A DNA stretch of 64,000 nucleotides from Rebecca billardiae RCC1528 (lineage: Eukaryota > Protista > Haptophyta), in NCBI GenBank assembly GCA_965240325.2, contig OZ251228.1:2108001-2172000 (forward strand). The letters run 5' to 3'. The position numbers and the translations under genes were made by a program. Shown here one piece after another: positions 11,510 to 16,583 of this stretch; position 1 is the first letter of the stretch; the number at the start of each line of letters is the position of its first letter. Below the pieces are notes generated by a model that was given only the letters and a program-made list of their open reading frames with translations, did not search any database and was not told the origin of the DNA.

Positions 11510-13073
11510 CTGATCTCATGCTCGGAAGTCCCACAGCGGGACTTCTCCGGGCCTGCGGTACTCGCCAGTGAAAACCTCCCGCGCCCCTCGAGATCATACG
11601 GAGTTGGCGGCGAGATCGCGCTCTTGCGCGGGCGGTGGGCGGGAGCGCGCGCCGGCGCTCGCTCGCGCGCTCGCTGCCCGCAGCGCGCGCGTCAGGTCGT
11701 CGCGAGCGCTTGCGCACCGGCGCTAGGGCGCGTGCCACCTGCGCACGCCGCTGGTTCGCGCCTGCGCGCTCTGCTCCGCCGCTGCGGCGCTTGCGAGCGC
11801 TCGCCGTGTCCTGCGCTGGTTCCGGGCCGCGTCGAAAGCCTGGTTGTGCGGCCAGCCAAGTGTGGCTTTTGCGGCTTGGCGCGCGAGCGCGCGACGCAGC
11901 GGATGGCGCGTGTGAGCCGTCCAGCCAGCGTCACTCGCCTCGTGCGCCGCGTGCCGACCGCGAGACCCAGATTCGACGCCGAGCGCTGCTCGGTCCGACG
12001 GTGAGACGCCAGACGGGTCGGCGCTCTGCATCGCAGAGCCGCGCGTGGTCGCGCAGAAGAGGCCGCGCGTGGCCGGCGCGGCCGCTGTGTGCCGTGGTCT
12101 AGACGTCAATTGCGTCCGCAGTAGGTGAGAACGCTTGCCTCGCCCAAGCGGTCACTCATCTTCTGCCCGTACACAGCGCGTGACACGTGAGGTGGATTCC
12201 GGAAGGTGTCTCGAGGTCACGCCGTCACCGATCGTAGCCACATAAGCCCTTGCGTGGAAGAGCTGCGCTCACGGAGATCGTGTACGTGTCATCAGCGCGC
12301 GACCAGACCATAACCATCGAGTTCTTGAAGCCGTCTACCAATGGAGTAGGATGGATTTGTTCGAGCCCGCTTCTGGCGGCACGAGATACGGCCCGGCACG
12401 CAGAGTCAGGTCAAGTCGCCCACTCGTGAGTGCGGCGTGACCGCTTGGGCAAGGCAAGCAACTGAGGACGCGATTGACGTCTAGACCACGGCACACAGCG
12501 GCCGCGCCGGCCACGCGCGGCCTCTTCTGCGCGACCACGCGCGGCTCTGCGATGCAGAGCGCCGACCCGTCTGGCGTCTCACCGTCGGACCGAGCAGCGC
12601 TCGGCGTCGAATCTGGGTCTCGCGGTCGGCACGCGGCGCACGAGGCGAGTGACGCTGGCTGGACGGCTCACACGCGCCATCCGCTGCGTCGCGCGCTCGC
12701 GCGCCAAGCCGCAAAAGCCACACTTGGCTGGCCGCACAACCAGGCTTTCGACGCGGCCCGGAACCAGCGCAGGACACGGCGAGCGCTCGCAAGCGCCGCA
12801 GCGGCGGAGCAGAGCGCGCAGGCGCGAACCAGCGGCGTGCGCAGGTGGCACGCGCCCTAGCGCCGGTGCGCAAGCGCTCGCGACGACCTGACGCGCGCGC
12901 TGCGGGCAGCGAGCGCGCGAGCGAGCGCCGGCGCGCGCTCCCGCCCACCGCCCGCGCAAGAGCGCGATCTCGCCGCCAACTCCGTATGATCTCGAGGGGC
13001 GCGGGAGGTTTTCACTGGCGAGTACCGCAGGCCCGGAGAAGTCCCGCTGTGGGACTTCCGAGCATGAGATCAG
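11510..13073. repeat. Long inverted repeat / foldback element: 601-bp arms, ~360-bp spacer
   Basis: 11510-12110 is the reverse complement of 12473-13073, and mirror ORFs in the ORF track are identical. Imperfect pairing extends to ~12155/12437. No TSD seen. Confidence 0.9.
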
Positions 13074-16000
13074 ATGACCTCCCCACCAAACCCTCCGAAG
13101 AAGGGCCAACACCGCCCGCATTCTCGCACGCTTGCGGACCGACCTCGCCCTCACGCCCTGCACGAGATTCGCGATCGAGCTTCCGTCCACCTGACGATGG
13201 GCATGAACCGCATGATGGGCGACGCGCACGCGCTGCCGGGGCTCTTCCCGCCGGCGACTGGTGGGGCGGGCGTCTTCGAGACGCACAAGTACGGGCTCAA
13301 GATCATCGGCGGCGCGGTCGCGTTCTACGTCAGCGCTGTCATCCTGAGCTTTGTCGCGCTCACTGAGTCGAACGAGCAGCTTCTGCCCCTCGAGCGCACC
13401 TTCGCGCAGGGTGCAGGGACGATTCTGCTCGGCAGCGTGATCATGCGCCTCATGCAGCTCTTCTTCTCGCCGCACGCCTCACCCACCAAGATGGCGGACG
13501 CCGCGATGCTCGCCACCAACATGATTGCCGCGAGCGCCAACCTGATGATGGGCACGATGGCCACGCCGATACTCGTCGACCCGCTCACCGGCACGACGGA
13601 GTACATGATTCGCTGGTGCGAGTGGACGACGCTCGCGTTCCTCATGACGTGCGTCGTCGAGGCGGTCGCGGCGAAGCACTCGTGGGAGTCGCTCTCGCTC
13701 GGCCTGCTGATGGGCCTGAGCGCGGGCTGCGGCCTCGTCCTCCCGTTCTGCACGAGCCCGTGGACGTGGGGCCTGTGGATGTTCTTTTCGTTCATCACCT
13801 ACTTCGCCCTCTTCCCGCGCTACTTCCGCCGGAAGCGCCTCTACGAGGAGGCCGTGCGCACGTGTGCGTGCCCGAGCGACGTGATGAACGTGGTCGAGAA
13901 CAAGGTGAGCCACAACCTCATGACCTGCTGCACCATCATGTGGACGCTGATCACGCTCGACTACTGCGTGACGTGGTTCGCGGCGCTGTGGCTCGGGGAC
14001 GACTACAAGAGCGGCCCGGAGCGGCCCCAGTGGCCCTTCATCCTCGACTGCGTGCTCGACGTCACCGCCAAGCTCCTGTGCGCGCTCGCCCACGCTGCTC
14101 GCGCCGCCGCGCGCCTCTCGCGCGCGAGCGCGCGCGCGCGCGCTCCCTCGGCAGCACGAGCTGATCCTCGCCGCAACCCGCCCGCCGCGCCTGCGCCTGC
14201 CGTGCGCGCTCGCAGGTACGCGCACATCATCTCGTGCTCGCACGCGCACGTCCCGCTCGAGGCGGAGCGCCAGCAGGCGCGCTGGATCCGCGAGGCGATG
14301 GACACGGTCTGGGCGGGCTCGCAGGACACGATCGTGCTCTCCGAGCGCCGGAACGACTCGACGGTGCGCACGATCGCGTCGAACGGCCTCGGCGCGGTCC
14401 TCGGCAAGGAGAATACGAGCGCGTGGGCCGCGTGGCGCACGCTCCCCATCAGGCAGGCCGCGCCCACCTCCGACCTCCGCTCGAAGCCGCTCAGCGCGCA
14501 CGAGGCGGACAGCTCGATGGACGAGGACACCTCTTCCTCGGACAGCAGGAGGAGCAGCGGCTCCGACGGGGCCGACGCGGTGGCGGAGCCGGCGCTGCAG
14601 CCGGACCGCAGCGCCAGCGTGGCGTTCCAGCAGCTCATCGAGGACGCGTGGCACTGGTCGGAGCGGAGCCTGCAGAAGACATTCACCACGACCTGGGTCG
14701 TCGACGCGGCCCGGCCGCCTGCCGCGGACGGCGCCGACGAGATCGCCGCCTCCGATGTGAGCACCATGCTCGCGGGCGCGGGCGCGGGCGCTGAGCCATC
14801 TGCGTCCGCCAGCCCAAAGGCCGAGGTGCGCCGCTTCGAGGTGCAGGTCACGAAAGCGCGGCGCTCACTCCACGGCGCGCCTTCGCACGTCGGCACGACC
14901 TTCCTCATCCTCGTGCTGCGCGACGTGACCGAGCGCGAGCGCATGCAGGAGCTCGAGCGGCAGCTCGTCGCCGAGATCGCCGACAAGTCGGTGCTCGCCG
15001 AGCGCATCGGCCGGAAGAAGGACGAGGAGGCCAACCGCTTCACGCGGCACGAGGTGAAGAACTGCGTGCTTGCCGCGATCGCGCAGTGCGAGGCGCTCGT
15101 CGACTGGCACGCCAAGACGACCGAGGGCTTCGCCCAGGCGGTCGACACGCAGCCGTTGCGCGAGGGGCTGACCGACCTGAGCTCCAAGCTGCAGCGCACG
15201 CTCAACACCGTGCTCGCCGCGGCGATGGCCAAGGACCTCGCCAACGGCGACTACGTCGCGAAGCCCGAGTTCACCACGGTCGAGACGCTGCTCCGCGACA
15301 ACCTCGCCTCGAACCAGCGCTTCGAGATGCGCTCCAAGCCCTCGCCGCTCCCGCCGATCTGGCTGGACCCGCAGCTGCTCTTCTGCGTGCACCGCAACGC
15401 CATCTCGAACGCGGTCAAGTACGGCTGCCAGACGAGCAAGATCGAGACGCAGCTCACGGTCGAAGGCGCCAAGCTCACGCTGCGCGTGACGAACGCGCCC
15501 GGCGACAGCCACGCCGAGCTGCTCAAGCTGCAGAACGCGGAGTGCGTCTTCGAGCGCGGGCTGCGCCTGCACAACGACGAGGACGAGCCGCGCGACGCGC
15601 AGCTGCGCCGCGTCTCGGCGGGCGACGGCGGCTGGATCATGCGGCAGTGCGCGCGCGCGCTCGGCGGCGACTGCTCCATCCGCTTCGAGGAGTCGAGGAC
15701 GGTGTTCGAGCTGCACTGCCCCGCGACGACGCGGCAGGAGACCTCGCAGCACGAGGTCGAGCTCTTCCAGCTCCCGCCCAGCACCGTCTGCGTCGGCATC
15801 GACGACTCGAAGGTGCAGCGCAAGATCCTCGGCATGATCTTCAGCGCGGTCGGCGGCCAGCCTGAGCGCACCGTCATCCTCGGCGACGAGGACAAGCACA
15901 TCCTCCACCTCGCGCCCAAGCTCGCCGCGATCGTGCGCGAGAGCCCTAACGAGCGCGTCTTCGTGATCGGCGACGAGAACCTCGACCTGACCGAGGGGTG

Positions 16001-16583
16001 CGCGTCCACCACCGTCTCGTGCACGCAGGCGTTCGGCGCGCTGCACTCGCTGCTGAGCGAGGACGAGATGGAGCGCGTGCTGCTCGTGATCCGCTCGGCG
16101 AACGACTCGCGCACCGACATTGGGCGATACCTCGAGCACGCGCACGCGGTGCTGCCGAAGCGCGGCTTCGCGAAGCAGGCGACCATCGACACGGTCGCGC
16201 CGATGTGGCGCACGCGCTTCCCGCGCATCTCGCCCGCGCTGAGACACCGCCTGAGCGCGGGGATGGCGCGCCAGACCAACATGGGCAGCCAGAGCAAAAT
16301 GCTCGACGAGATCCGGTGCGAGGTGAGCCGCGTCGTGTGCAAGCTGTGCCAGGAGATCAGCGCGCGCTCGACGCCGTGGGAGAACGTGAAGCGCGCGCTC
16401 GTCACGATCAAGGGCGAGCTCGCCTCCCTGAACGCGGTCTGCGGCGGCGGCGAGGAGCAGATCGTCGAGGTCGTGAGGCGCGTCGAGGCGCTGCTCGCGC
16501 ACGAGGACCTGCCGCACGTCTTCCAGACGTCGTGGCCCAACCTGCTGATGGCGATCAACCGCACCCTCGCCTCGGCGTGCTAG
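13074..16583 (+). CDS. Rhodopsin-histidine kinase-receiver fusion (histidine kinase rhodopsin-like); intron 14078-14215; start may be ATG 13197
   Basis: Eight hydrophobic helices; helix C YMIRWCEW; spliced helix G LDVTAKLLYAHII; PAS-end LVLRDVTERE; H-box FTRHEVKN; N-box NAISNAVKY; F-box VFERG; G2-like GDGGW; receiver IDDS...IGDENL...IRSAN...LPK; HPt-like tail. Confidence 0.85.
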   Translation: MTSPPNPPKKGQHRPHSRTLADRPRPHALHEIRDRASVHLTMGMNRMMGDAHALPGLFPPATGGAGVFETHKYGLKIIGGAVAFYVSAVILSFVALTESNEQLLPLERTFAQGAGTILLGSVIMRLMQLFFSPHASPTKMADAAMLATNMIAASANLMMGTMATPILVDPLTGTTEYMIRWCEWTTLAFLMTCVVEAVAAKHSWESLSLGLLMGLSAGCGLVLPFCTSPWTWGLWMFFSFITYFALFPRYFRRKRLYEEAVRTCACPSDVMNVVENKVSHNLMTCCTIMWTLITLDYCVTWFAALWLGDDYKSGPERPQWPFILDCVLDVTAKLLCALAHAARAAARLSRASARARAPSAARADPRRNPPAAPAPAVRARRYAHIISCSHAHVPLEAERQQARWIREAMDTVWAGSQDTIVLSERRNDSTVRTIASNGLGAVLGKENTSAWAAWRTLPIRQAAPTSDLRSKPLSAHEADSSMDEDTSSSDSRRSSGSDGADAVAEPALQPDRSASVAFQQLIEDAWHWSERSLQKTFTTTWVVDAARPPAADGADEIAASDVSTMLAGAGAGAEPSASASPKAEVRRFEVQVTKARRSLHGAPSHVGTTFLILVLRDVTERERMQELERQLVAEIADKSVLAERIGRKKDEEANRFTRHEVKNCVLAAIAQCEALVDWHAKTTEGFAQAVDTQPLREGLTDLSSKLQRTLNTVLAAAMAKDLANGDYVAKPEFTTVETLLRDNLASNQRFEMRSKPSPLPPIWLDPQLLFCVHRNAISNAVKYGCQTSKIETQLTVEGAKLTLRVTNAPGDSHAELLKLQNAECVFERGLRLHNDEDEPRDAQLRRVSAGDGGWIMRQCARALGGDCSIRFEESRTVFELHCPATTRQETSQHEVELFQLPPSTVCVGIDDSKVQRKILGMIFSAVGGQPERTVILGDEDKHILHLAPKLAAIVRESPNERVFVIGDENLDLTEGCASTTVSCTQAFGALHSLLSEDEMERVLLVIRSANDSRTDIGRYLEHAHAVLPKRGFAKQATIDTVAPMWRTRFPRISPALRHRLSAGMARQTNMGSQSKMLDEIRCEVSRVVCKLCQEISARSTPWENVKRALVTIKGELASLNAVCGGGEEQIVEVVRRVEALLAHEDLPHVFQTSWPNLLMAINRTLASAC

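What the first reader, a model, noticed from the sequence alone, without database searches (positions are those of the whole stretch)
13074..16583. Candidate light-sensing two-component system in one protein: divergent 8-TM rhodopsin-PAS-HK-REC-pseudo-HPt
Seen: eight hydrophobic helices. Helix C RWCEW (13611-13625) aligns to bacteriorhodopsin R82-Y-A-D85-W86 with Glu as counterion. After splicing, helix G LDVTAKLLYAHII gives the DxxxK retinal-Lys motif (K codon 14070-14072). A PAS-like end motif, H-box His (15048-15050), N/F/G boxes and a receiver with the acceptor Asp (15972-15974) follow. Established: histidine kinase rhodopsins are characterised mainly in green algae (Chlamydomonas COP5-12, Ostreococcus Rhod-HK), and enzyme-rhodopsins carry an extra N-terminal helix. 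Inference: this is a divergent HKR from a secondary-plastid alga. It has an E-L-V triad at BR positions 85/89/96, lacks the TP of helix C and YP of helix F, and has no cyclase output, so its photochemistry may be unusual.
Basis: partly seen in the sequence, partly recalled or inferred. Interest (0 to 1): 0.92.

Follow-up and report, generated by a model that had tools for sequence, protein, structure and literature searches.

The report
Haptophyte rhodopsin–histidine kinase phosphorelay gene
This gene of a GC-rich haptophyte-type alga most likely encodes a light sensor: an eight-helix retinal-type rhodopsin fused to a histidine kinase, a receiver and a histidine-less phosphotransfer-like tail, from a large family in haptophytes and diatoms that the checked database names never call a rhodopsin.

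Summary
Window 13074-16583 (+) is one 1169-codon ORF with an in-frame GT-AG intron (14078-14215). A transcript-derived Pavlova gyrans ortholog lacks exactly these 46 residues.

Pfam does not see a rhodopsin. However, 269 cluster representatives match the TM domain. They share invariant Arg and Lys, R-W-x-E-W in TM3 and D-V-x-A-K in TM7.

The family profile matches only microbial rhodopsins in the PDB, best the 8-TM rhodopsin phosphodiesterase (E 7e-7). An AlphaFold model of the ortholog's TM domain (pLDDT 94) has eight helices and again matches rhodopsins.

Downstream:
- The kinase ATP-binding domain is supported by profile (E 4e-6).
- The receiver is supported by fold, with all five active-site residues in place.
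- A four-helix tail carries Val where relatives have the HPt His.
- The PAS domain is only weakly supported.
- No cyclase is present.

Named relatives are haptophytes and diatoms, labelled "hypothetical", "histidine kinase" or "HPt domain-containing". No paper I could search describes the family.

Retinal binding and light control are inferred, not shown. First-stage notes of this scan report further such genes elsewhere in this genome.

The parts
13074..16583 (+). Whole ORF (1169 codons including the in-frame intron). The likely true start is Met42 (13197) or a nearby Met.
   Evidence: ORF. (40% identity to P0001 over aa 74-1164, E=0). (an inverted repeat ends at 13073).
13290..13358 (+). TM0, the extra N-terminal helix typical of 8-TM enzyme rhodopsins
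   Evidence: Helix 10-32 of the AF2 model of the ortholog, mapped to the window through alignment A1.
13386..14075 (+). TM1 to the first half of TM7 of the rhodopsin core, with a beta-hairpin between TM2 and TM3 at 13563-13604
   Evidence: Foldseek PDB hits are all microbial rhodopsins.
13611..13625 (+). TM3 motif R180-W-C-E183-W184, equivalent to BR R82, D85 and W86
   Evidence: Family counts: R 44/44, E 41/44, W 42/44. The profile aligns it to RYAEW of Rh-PDE.
14058..14072 (+). TM7 motif D329-V-T-A-K333, equivalent to BR D212 and K216. K333 is the putative Schiff-base lysine.
   Evidence: Family counts: K 44/44, D 41/44. The profile aligns it to D-I-V-A-K of ChRmine.
14078..14215 (+). In-frame GT-AG intron (138 nt) that splits TM7
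   Evidence: splice dinucleotides. (exact 46-aa gap in the transcript-derived ortholog).
14216..14945 (+). Cytoplasmic extension of TM7 plus a PAS-like linker with a low-complexity insert. It ends in LRDVTERE (14916-14939).
   Evidence: The family conserves S-S-D-V-I-x-I-S ... C-E-x-K ... R-D-V-T-E-R. Only sub-threshold PAS/LOV matches, E 0.17-0.9. hhalign to a true PAS was negative.
15039..15062 (+). DHp H-box FTRHEVKN with phospho-acceptor His659 (15048-15050)
   Evidence: His is conserved in 40/42 relatives. The profile matches DHp+CA of a solved histidine kinase, 8u4x.
15390..15641 (+). Kinase catalytic (CA) domain boxes: N box (15390-15425), atypical G1 T-N-A-P-G (15486-15512), G2 S-A-G-D-G-G-W (15615-15641)
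   Evidence: Pfam HATPase_c E 4.4e-4, covering profile positions 2-109 of 111, below the curated cutoff. Family profile against YycG CA, E 4.3e-6. Box conservation.
15786..16220 (+). Receiver domain with D910, D911, acceptor D967 (15972-15974), S1008 and K1029
   Evidence: AF2 pLDDT 86.8 with a (beta/alpha)5 pattern. Listed Foldseek hits are almost all response-regulator receiver structures, TM 0.65-0.78 normalised to the target for the single-domain receivers. Residue positions.
16290..16580 (+). HPt-like four-helix tail with Val1110 (16401-16403) in place of the phospho-His
   Evidence: Four helices in the model. Family consensus L-H-x-L-K-G-D, with His in 26 of 31 members that have this segment. 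2 of 12 members weakly match Pfam Hpt. No further HPt exon downstream.

Best explanation
The gene encodes a single-chain photoreceptor of the enzyme-rhodopsin kind.

An 8-TM microbial-type rhodopsin (TM0 plus seven core helices) is expected to bind retinal at Lys333 in TM7. Asp329 would be the main counterion, with Glu183 and Arg180 of TM3 beside it, as in rhodopsin phosphodiesterase.

Light-driven movement of TM7 would pass along its long cytoplasmic helical extension, through a PAS-like linker, to the dimerisation helices of a histidine kinase. This would change autophosphorylation of His659. The phosphoryl group would then move to Asp967 of the fused receiver.

Most relatives end in an HPt domain with the canonical His, so they carry a complete HK-REC-HPt relay in one chain. 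This copy has Val at that place. Its relay must therefore end at the receiver, use a separate HPt protein, or work with a paralog.

Shown here: the homology, the fold, the conserved catalytic residues, the intron, and the family's named members in haptophytes and diatoms. Inferred: retinal binding, light control and its sign, ATP use, and the downstream target.
For: Gene and family:
- The ORF is conserved end to end with a transcript-derived ortholog, and the intron gap is exact.
- The family has 269 representatives and invariant R and K.

Rhodopsin domain:
- The family profile hits only microbial rhodopsins in the PDB: Rh-PDE 6.9e-7, ChRmine 2.3e-3, then a bacteriorhodopsin-like protein, cruxrhodopsin and sensory rhodopsin II. 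The residue-level alignment pairs RWcEW with RYAEW and DviaK with DIVAK.
- The AF2 model of the ortholog's TM domain has pLDDT 94.4 and pTM 0.91, with 8 helices and a B-C hairpin.
- Foldseek against the PDB: the 50 listed hits are all microbial rhodopsins, led by 8-TM Rh-PDE.
- The language-model atlas gives 98 of 100 nearest clusters with Bac_rhodopsin.
- Retinal-pocket aromatics are kept: W184 corresponds to BR W86, and W226 and Y/W233 (ortholog numbering) to BR W182 and W189.

Kinase, receiver, tail:
- Kinase.
- Receiver fold, with all five active-site residues at the canonical structural positions.
- HPt-like tail.

Modular use elsewhere:
- The same TM module is fused to other signalling enzymes (guanylate cyclase plus phosphodiesterase) in diatoms, as expected of a modular sensor.
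Against: - No experiment exists. No pigment, spectrum or kinase assay is available for any member.
- Pfam Bac_rhodopsin fails on this protein and on 42 of 44 relatives.
- The TM model is of the ortholog, and its coordinates could not be inspected, so 'Lys faces the pocket' rests on alignment to solved rhodopsins.
- The kinase G1 box has N-x-P-G instead of D-x-G-x-G throughout the family. In other GHKL ATPases, loss of this Asp usually abolishes ATP binding (my own knowledge). One solved kinase, 9m08, also shows Asn at the aligned place.
- The HPt-like tail lacks the His.
- No RNA run could be listed, so transcription of this copy is unverified.
Confidence: 0.75

Rival explanations
1. The protein has a rhodopsin fold but is not a light sensor. 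The TM domain is an opsin-related module that binds no retinal, like fungal opsin-related and HSP30-type proteins, and senses something else such as a lipid, an ion or membrane state.
For: Pfam does not recognise it. It lacks the Thr-Pro of helix C and the Tyr-Pro of helix F. AFDB hits beyond the family include an HSP30 protein at TM 0.62.
Against: Lys is invariant in 44/44 members, with near-invariant Asp four residues before it, Arg/Glu/Trp in TM3 and Trp in TM6. Conservation of exactly the retinal-site residues is hard to explain without a chromophore. Opsin-related proteins that do not bind retinal typically lack the Lys (my own knowledge).
Confidence: 0.1
2. It is a real photoreceptor family, but this copy is a catalytically silent or regulatory paralog. 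With an atypical ATP site and a His-less HPt tail, it modulates sister kinases, for example as a heterodimer partner or phosphate sink, and does not run a relay of its own.
For: Val1110 replaces the HPt His, whereas 26 of 31 relatives keep His. A Rebecca sp. relative shares the His-less tail with a very similar sequence, so the variant appears to be maintained. First-stage notes list at least eight further rhodopsin-kinase genes in this genome (unchecked). Heterodimeric enzyme rhodopsins are known (NeoR/RGC, PMC8815786).
Against: His659, the N and G2 boxes, and all receiver residues are intact in this copy. The unusual G1 box is family-wide and not a defect of this copy. A relay ending at a receiver is normal for hybrid kinases.
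Confidence: 0.12
3. It is simply a member of the already characterised green-algal HKR / 2c-Cyclop clade, so nothing is new.
For: The general architecture is the same: 8-TM rhodopsin, kinase, receiver. A 2026 survey lists a large 'canonical HKR' cluster whose composition I could not inspect (PMC13739731).
Against: - No cyclase in this protein or in 43 long relatives, and no Pfam HisKA, Response_reg or Bac_rhodopsin at the level seen in ordinary members.
- About 280 residues, including a PAS-like domain, separate Lys from the phospho-His. In Cr2c-Cyclop1 the gap is 54 residues, K298 to H352 (PMC6284317).
- All named relatives among those looked up are haptophytes or diatoms.
- In AFDB the family forms its own unnamed clusters (TM 0.87-0.88). 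The next protein named 'histidine kinase' has TM 0.69 and 11% identity.
Confidence: 0.05
4. The locus is a pseudogene or an artefact of long chance ORFs in GC-rich DNA.
For: The window is about 70% GC, and long spurious ORFs occur on other frames, for example a 687-aa ORF on the opposite strand. A perfect inverted repeat abuts the 5' end. No RNA run could be listed.
Against: There is 40% identity over about 1100 residues to an expressed ortholog, with every functional motif intact and no frame breaks. The only insertion relative to the ortholog is bounded by GT..AG.
Confidence: 0.03

Closest known systems
Rhodopsin phosphodiesterase (Rh-PDE) of Salpingoeca rosetta (PDB 7cj3, 7d7q)
   Same: It is the best sequence-profile match (E 6.9e-7) and the best fold match. 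Both have 8 TM helices with an N-terminal TM0. Both have Glu in the R-[YW]-x-E-W motif of TM3 and D-x-x-x-K in TM7. In both, TM7 continues into a cytoplasmic linker that leads to an enzyme.
   Different: The output is a histidine kinase relay, not a PDE. TM3 has L-A-F where Rh-PDE has T-C-P. Identity is only about 14%. The lineage is haptophyte, not choanoflagellate.
Green-algal histidine kinase rhodopsins / two-component cyclase opsins (Chlamydomonas COP5-12, Cr2c-Cyclop1, Vc2c-Cyclop1)
   Same: One chain carries an 8-TM rhodopsin, a histidine kinase and a receiver. The logic is presumably the same: light modulates autophosphorylation and His-to-Asp transfer (PMC6284317).
   Different: There is no cyclase, and an HPt-like tail takes its place. 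A PAS-like domain of about 280 residues lies between the retinal Lys and the phospho-His, against 54 residues in Cr2c-Cyclop1. Acidic residues are kept at both counterion positions, whereas Cop6 lacks D85 and D212 (PMC7693036). The kinase and receiver are too divergent for the Pfam cutoffs. Named relatives are haptophytes and diatoms.
Ot-HKR (Rhod-HK) of Ostreococcus tauri, the 'noncanonical HKR'
   Same: It is a rhodopsin plus kinase plus receiver without a cyclase (my own knowledge of the architecture; cited as a separate cluster in PMC13739731).
   Different: I had no sequence to compare. No chlorophyte was found among the named relatives looked up. The relationship is untested.
Bacterial 'unorthodox' hybrid kinases with HK-REC-HPt in one chain (ArcB, BarA/GacS type)
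   Same: The order of phosphorelay modules is the same. The GacS D1 receiver is among the fold hits.
   Different: The sensor here is a rhodopsin. This copy's HPt lacks the His. The protein is eukaryotic.

Membership tests
Microbial (type-1) rhodopsin | Seven-helix core with the microbial-rhodopsin fold | tested here: met
   AF2 model of the 58%-identical ortholog: pLDDT 94.4. Foldseek PDB: the listed hits are all microbial rhodopsins, TM up to 0.81 normalised to the target. Atlas: bacteriorhodopsin cluster at TM 0.81.
Microbial (type-1) rhodopsin | Lys in TM7 for the retinal Schiff base, with the D-x-x-x-K context | tested here: met
   K333, invariant in 44/44 members. D329, conserved in 41/44. 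Aligned to the D-I-V-A-K motif of ChRmine TM7.
Microbial (type-1) rhodopsin | Sequence membership by the curated model (Pfam PF01036) | tested here: not met
   No hit at E<=1 for the window protein. Only 2 of 44 relatives match. Homology appears only with a family profile.
Microbial (type-1) rhodopsin | Covalent retinal and a light-driven photocycle | not testable with these tools
   Needs expression and spectroscopy.
8-TM enzyme rhodopsins ('type Ib') | Extra N-terminal helix TM0 and an enzyme domain fused to the C-terminus | tested here: met
   Helix 10-32 precedes the seven-helix core in the model. The best structural match is 8-TM Rh-PDE. A kinase follows.
Histidine kinase rhodopsin (canonical, COP5-12 / 2c-Cyclop) | Nucleotide cyclase output after the receiver | tested here: not met
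   No Guanylate_cyc in the window protein or in 43 long relatives.
Histidine kinase rhodopsin (canonical, COP5-12 / 2c-Cyclop) | The rhodopsin domain falls in the green-algal HKR clade | not tested
Indirect evidence is against it.
Sensor histidine kinase | DHp helix with a phospho-accepting His in an H-box | tested here: met
   F-T-R-H-E-V-K-N with His659. His is conserved in 40/42 relatives. The profile matches DHp+CA of 8u4x.
Sensor histidine kinase | GHKL ATP-binding domain with N, G1, F and G2 boxes | tested here: inconclusive
   The domain is detected (Pfam E 4.4e-4, below the cutoff; family profile E 4.3e-6 against YycG). The N and G2 boxes are present. The G1 Asp is replaced by Asn throughout the family.
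Response-regulator receiver | CheY-like (beta/alpha)5 fold with the acidic pair, acceptor Asp, Ser/Thr and Lys | tested here: met
   AF2 pLDDT 86.8. Fold hits are almost all receiver structures. D910/D911 follow beta-1, D967 ends beta-3, S1008 ends beta-4, K1029 follows beta-5. Pfam Response_reg itself does not match.
HPt domain | Four-helix bundle with a phospho-accepting His in H-x-x-K-G | tested here: not met
   Four helices are predicted and the K-G is kept, but Val1110 replaces the His. Relatives mostly have the His. It is a pseudo-HPt.
PAS domain | PAS fold between the sensor and the DHp helices | tested here: inconclusive
   Only four PDB matches at E 0.17-0.93, all PAS/LOV proteins. 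hhalign to a true PAS of a relative was negative. No structure model was made for this part.

The most novel reading that the evidence does not exclude
The R-W-x-E-W / D-V-x-A-K rhodopsins would be a separate, so far unrecognised superfamily of enzyme rhodopsins found in haptophytes and diatoms. On this reading:
- They arose independently of the green-algal HKRs and are closer to the Rh-PDE type.
- They couple light to a complete one-chain HK-REC-HPt phosphorelay.
- In diatoms the same module couples to a guanylate cyclase/phosphodiesterase.

They would then be a major unexplored light-signalling route in ocean phytoplankton and a new source of optogenetic kinases.
Probability: 0.45. Interest if true: 0.9.

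Novelty: new variant of a known kind. Interest (0 to 1): 0.78.

Why it matters
Haptophytes and diatoms carry out a large share of ocean photosynthesis. Their known sensory photoreceptors are mainly flavin- and bilin-based. Histidine kinase rhodopsins are described in the literature I could search as a green-algal group.

A large, conserved rhodopsin-kinase family in these lineages, missed by the standard rhodopsin model, would add a retinal-based signalling route to their photobiology. It offers testable candidates for green or blue light control of the cell cycle, motility or life-cycle transitions. It also provides new light-controlled kinase and phosphorelay modules for optogenetics.

The His-less HPt copy, and the same module inside diatom cyclase/phosphodiesterase proteins, give natural variants for working out how the signal leaves the membrane domain.

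Tried and rejected
- Single-sequence searches of the TM domain against the PDB and Pfam found no rhodopsin. Only the family profile did.
- A word-based homolog search of the TM region found a single protein. The exhaustive search was needed.
- I looked for a further HPt exon downstream, as in the P. gyrans ortholog, which has a second true Hpt at 1101-1175. tblastn found none in the window.
- RNA or DNA sequencing runs: none was listed in two requests, and a further attempt failed with a busy-server error.
- PAS: the profile against the PDB gave only sub-threshold hits, and hhalign against a genuine PAS of relative P0117 was negative.
- Pfam on the receiver/HPt part of 12 members gave no Response_reg and only 2 weak Hpt matches.
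- Ten literature searches found no paper on rhodopsin-kinase fusions in haptophytes or diatoms. Subscription reviews, such as Mukherjee et al. 2019, could not be read. The supplements of PMC13739731 are not held.
- A tree with canonical HKRs, Ot-HKR, RhoGC and bestrhodopsins could not be built, because no tool gave me those sequences.
- The model coordinates cannot be read, so pocket geometry was not measured.


Full report
**1. The observation**

Window 13074-16583 (+) is one uninterrupted reading frame of 1169 codons. The DNA is about 67-71% GC. In such DNA long ORFs arise by chance; a 687-aa ORF lies on the opposite strand. ORF length alone therefore proves nothing.

Homology does. A transcript-derived protein of Pavlova gyrans (P0001, MMETSP1466, 1216 aa) aligns from ORF residue 74 to 1164 at 40% identity, E = 0. 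The TM part is 58% identical.

- RWCEW at 13611-13625.
- The Lys codon at 14070-14072, inside LDVTAK.
- His659 at 15048-15050.
- Asp967 at 15972-15974.

**2. The intron**

The stretch 14078-14215 begins with GT, ends with AG, and is 138 nt long, so it is in frame. Its translation is low-complexity Ala/Arg/Pro sequence. The P. gyrans protein has a gap of exactly these 46 residues.

After splicing, TM7 reads K-L-L-Y-A-H-I-I. This restores the family pattern, in which Tyr stands at Lys+3 in 36 of 44 members. No sequencing run could be listed for this locus, so the splice is supported by comparison and not by reads.

**3. The membrane domain is a rhodopsin**

Single-sequence searches fail. Pfam reports no Bac_rhodopsin, and phmmer against the PDB finds nothing relevant. 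A language-model search pointed to rhodopsins, with 98 of the 100 nearest clusters carrying Bac_rhodopsin.

An exhaustive phmmer search of 1.84 billion cluster representatives found 269 proteins at E<=1e-3 and 161 at E<=1e-10. Nearly all carry R-W-[CAV]-E-W and, about 150 residues later, D-V-x-A-K.

In an alignment of 44 TM domains (ortholog numbering):
- Arg116 and Lys268 are invariant.
- Glu119, Trp120, Asp264 and Trp226 are conserved in 90% or more of the members.

These correspond to bacteriorhodopsin R82, K216, D85, W86, D212 and W182. A further Tyr/Trp stands at the place of BR W189.

A profile of this alignment matches only microbial rhodopsins in the PDB:
- S. rosetta rhodopsin phosphodiesterase, E 6.9e-7. 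RWcEW aligns to its RYAEW.
- ChRmine, E 2.3e-3. DviaK aligns to its DIVAK.
- Then a bacteriorhodopsin-like protein, cruxrhodopsin and sensory rhodopsin II.

AlphaFold2 on the ortholog's residues 1-300, with this alignment, gave pLDDT 94.4 and pTM 0.91. The model has eight long helices and a beta-hairpin between the third and fourth.

Fold searches agree:
- Foldseek against the PDB listed only microbial rhodopsins, led by the 8-TM Rh-PDE.
- The ESM Atlas search gave a bacteriorhodopsin cluster at TM 0.81.
- In AlphaFold DB the best two matches (TM 0.87-0.88) are unnamed proteins of 964 and 855 aa. Everything else is below 0.7.

- BR positions 85/89/96 are E/L/V.
- The T-P of helix C is A-F.
- The Y-P of helix F is absent.

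One correction is needed. In Rh-PDE the homologous Glu164 is permanently protonated and Asp292 is the counterion (PMC7644710). Calling Glu183 'the counterion' is therefore premature.

**4. The cytoplasmic part**

Nineteen full-length relatives align along the whole chain.

*PAS-like region.* After TM7 comes a region with conserved S-S-D-V-I-x-I-S, C-E-x-K and R-D-V-T-E-R blocks, interrupted by a variable acidic or Ser-rich insert. Its profile finds only four PDB proteins, all PAS/LOV, but at E 0.17-0.93. hhalign to a true PAS was negative. 'PAS-like' remains an inference.

*Kinase.*
- The H-box F-T-R-H-E-V-K-N is conserved, with His in 40 of 42 members.
- The family profile matches the ATP-binding domain of YycG (E 4.3e-6) and other histidine kinases, including DHp+CA of 8u4x.
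- Pfam HATPase_c covers positions 2-109 of 111 at E 4.4e-4, below the curated cutoff. It matches 25 of 43 long relatives.
- The N and G2 boxes are canonical.
- The G1 box is N-x-P-G in every member instead of D-x-G-x-G. The Asn aligns to the Asp of YycG and to an Asn of another solved kinase, 9m08.

*Receiver.* Pfam does not see it. AlphaFold2 on window 15750-16580 (pLDDT 86.8) gives a (beta/alpha)5 unit followed by four helices. Foldseek returns almost only receiver structures, such as CheY, PhoB, Sln1, ETR1 and GacS D1, at TM 0.65-0.78 for the single-domain receivers. D910/D911, D967, S1008 and K1029 sit at the ends of strands 1, 3, 4 and 5, as in CheY.

*HPt-like tail.* The four-helix tail carries the family motif L-H-x-L-K-G-D on its second helix. 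26 of 31 members that have this segment have the His. This protein has L-V-T-I-K-G. A Rebecca sp. protein has a very similar His-less tail. The P. gyrans ortholog keeps the His and adds a second, Pfam-positive Hpt (E 3.3e-9). The window has no such exon downstream.

No cyclase is present here or in 43 long relatives.

**5. Who has it, and what is it called**

Named relatives are:
- Haptophytes: Pavlova gyrans, Rebecca sp., Diacronema lutheri, Prymnesium sp., Chrysotila/Pleurochrysis.
- Diatoms: Rhizosolenia, Cylindrotheca, Skeletonema, Cyclotella.

Their public names are 'hypothetical protein', 'signal transduction histidine kinase' or 'HPt domain-containing protein'. None is named a rhodopsin. 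No chlorophyte appeared among the proteins I looked up.

The window's closest relatives are Pavlovophyceae, so the genome is most likely from that class. First-stage notes of this scan list at least eight more rhodopsin-kinase-receiver(-HPt) genes on other pieces of the same genome. I did not check them. They suggest a multigene family.

**6. Mechanism**

By analogy with Rh-PDE and the two-component cyclase opsins (PMC7644710; PMC6284317), the proposed chain of events is:
- Retinal at Lys333 isomerises.
- TM7 moves. In the model it runs on as one helix for about 25 residues beyond the membrane.
- The signal passes through the PAS-like module to the DHp helices of a dimer.
- This changes autophosphorylation at His659 and transfer to Asp967.

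The sign of the light effect cannot be predicted. It is inhibition in 2c-Cyclops and activation in Rh-PDE.

Because the HPt His is missing, the phosphorylated receiver must do one of three things:
- Act directly, perhaps by changing its contact with the pseudo-HPt bundle.
- Pass the phosphate to a separate HPt protein.
- Work with a His-bearing paralog.

**7. Comparison with known systems, and novelty**

The protein works like a histidine kinase rhodopsin, which is a known kind. It differs from the characterised green-algal HKRs in five ways:
- Its rhodopsin domain is closest to Rh-PDE in the PDB comparison.
- Both counterion positions keep carboxylates.
- About 280 residues with a PAS-like module separate Lys from the phospho-His, against 54 in Cr2c-Cyclop1.
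- The chain ends in HPt and not in a cyclase.
- Named relatives are haptophytes and diatoms.

Specialists describe HKRs as green-algal (bioRxiv 10.1101/2020.04.15.042127; reviews). None of ten full-text searches found this family.

A 2026 survey of about 40,000 rhodopsin-like sequences lists canonical and noncanonical HKR clusters and 17 uncharacterised clusters (PMC13739731). This family may be among them. I could not check that, nor read the subscription reviews.

I therefore rate it a new variant of a known kind. It is real and well supported in silico, but without experimental data.

**8. Limits**

- Retinal binding, light regulation and nucleotide use are inferred.
- The 5' end is uncertain: a perfect inverted repeat ends at 13073, and conservation starts at aa 74.
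- No tree against other enzyme rhodopsins could be made.

Noticed in passing
window 11510-12122 and 12461-13073: A perfect (100%) 613-nt inverted repeat with a 338-nt spacer. Its right arm ends one base before the ORF's first ATG. It could be a foldback-type element or an assembly artefact. It casts doubt on the first 41 codons of the ORF.
   Followed up: partly
P0208 (Seminavis robusta, 1468 aa) residues ~975-1260; P0209 residues ~380-666: The same RWCEW / D-x-x-x-K eight-helix module occurs in diatom guanylate cyclase/phosphodiesterase proteins. In P0208 the Pfam PDEase_I match comes as two stretches. The best one (799-941, profile positions 1-117 of 238) lies before the TM module, and PDE-like sequence follows it. 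The rhodopsin-like domain therefore seems to be inserted inside the PDE catalytic domain. I found no paper linking diatom cyclase/phosphodiesterase proteins to rhodopsin.
   Followed up: partly
window 15486-15512: The kinase G1 box is N-x-P-G (here T-N-A-P-G) in all relatives that have this segment, instead of D-x-G-x-G. The Asn aligns to the adenine-binding Asp of YycG and to an Asn in the solved kinase 9m08. Nucleotide preference is worth testing.
   Followed up: partly
window 14757-14819: A possible second in-frame intron of 63 nt (GTGAGC...AG) inside the poorly conserved insert of the PAS-like region. The ortholog has a gap of similar size there. Untested.
   Followed up: no
P0002 (Rebecca sp. 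RCC1486, 856 aa): A shorter relative keeps the rhodopsin, the PAS-like part and a His-less HPt-like tail very similar to the window's. It lacks the kinase ATP-binding domain and the receiver, and its H-box is degenerate. It could be a natural truncated paralog or a transcript-assembly artefact.
   Followed up: no
other pieces of the same genome (first-stage notes): At least eight further first-stage notes describe rhodopsin-PAS-kinase-receiver(-HPt) genes elsewhere in this genome, one of them with two HPt domains. This suggests a multigene family. I did not verify them.
   Followed up: no
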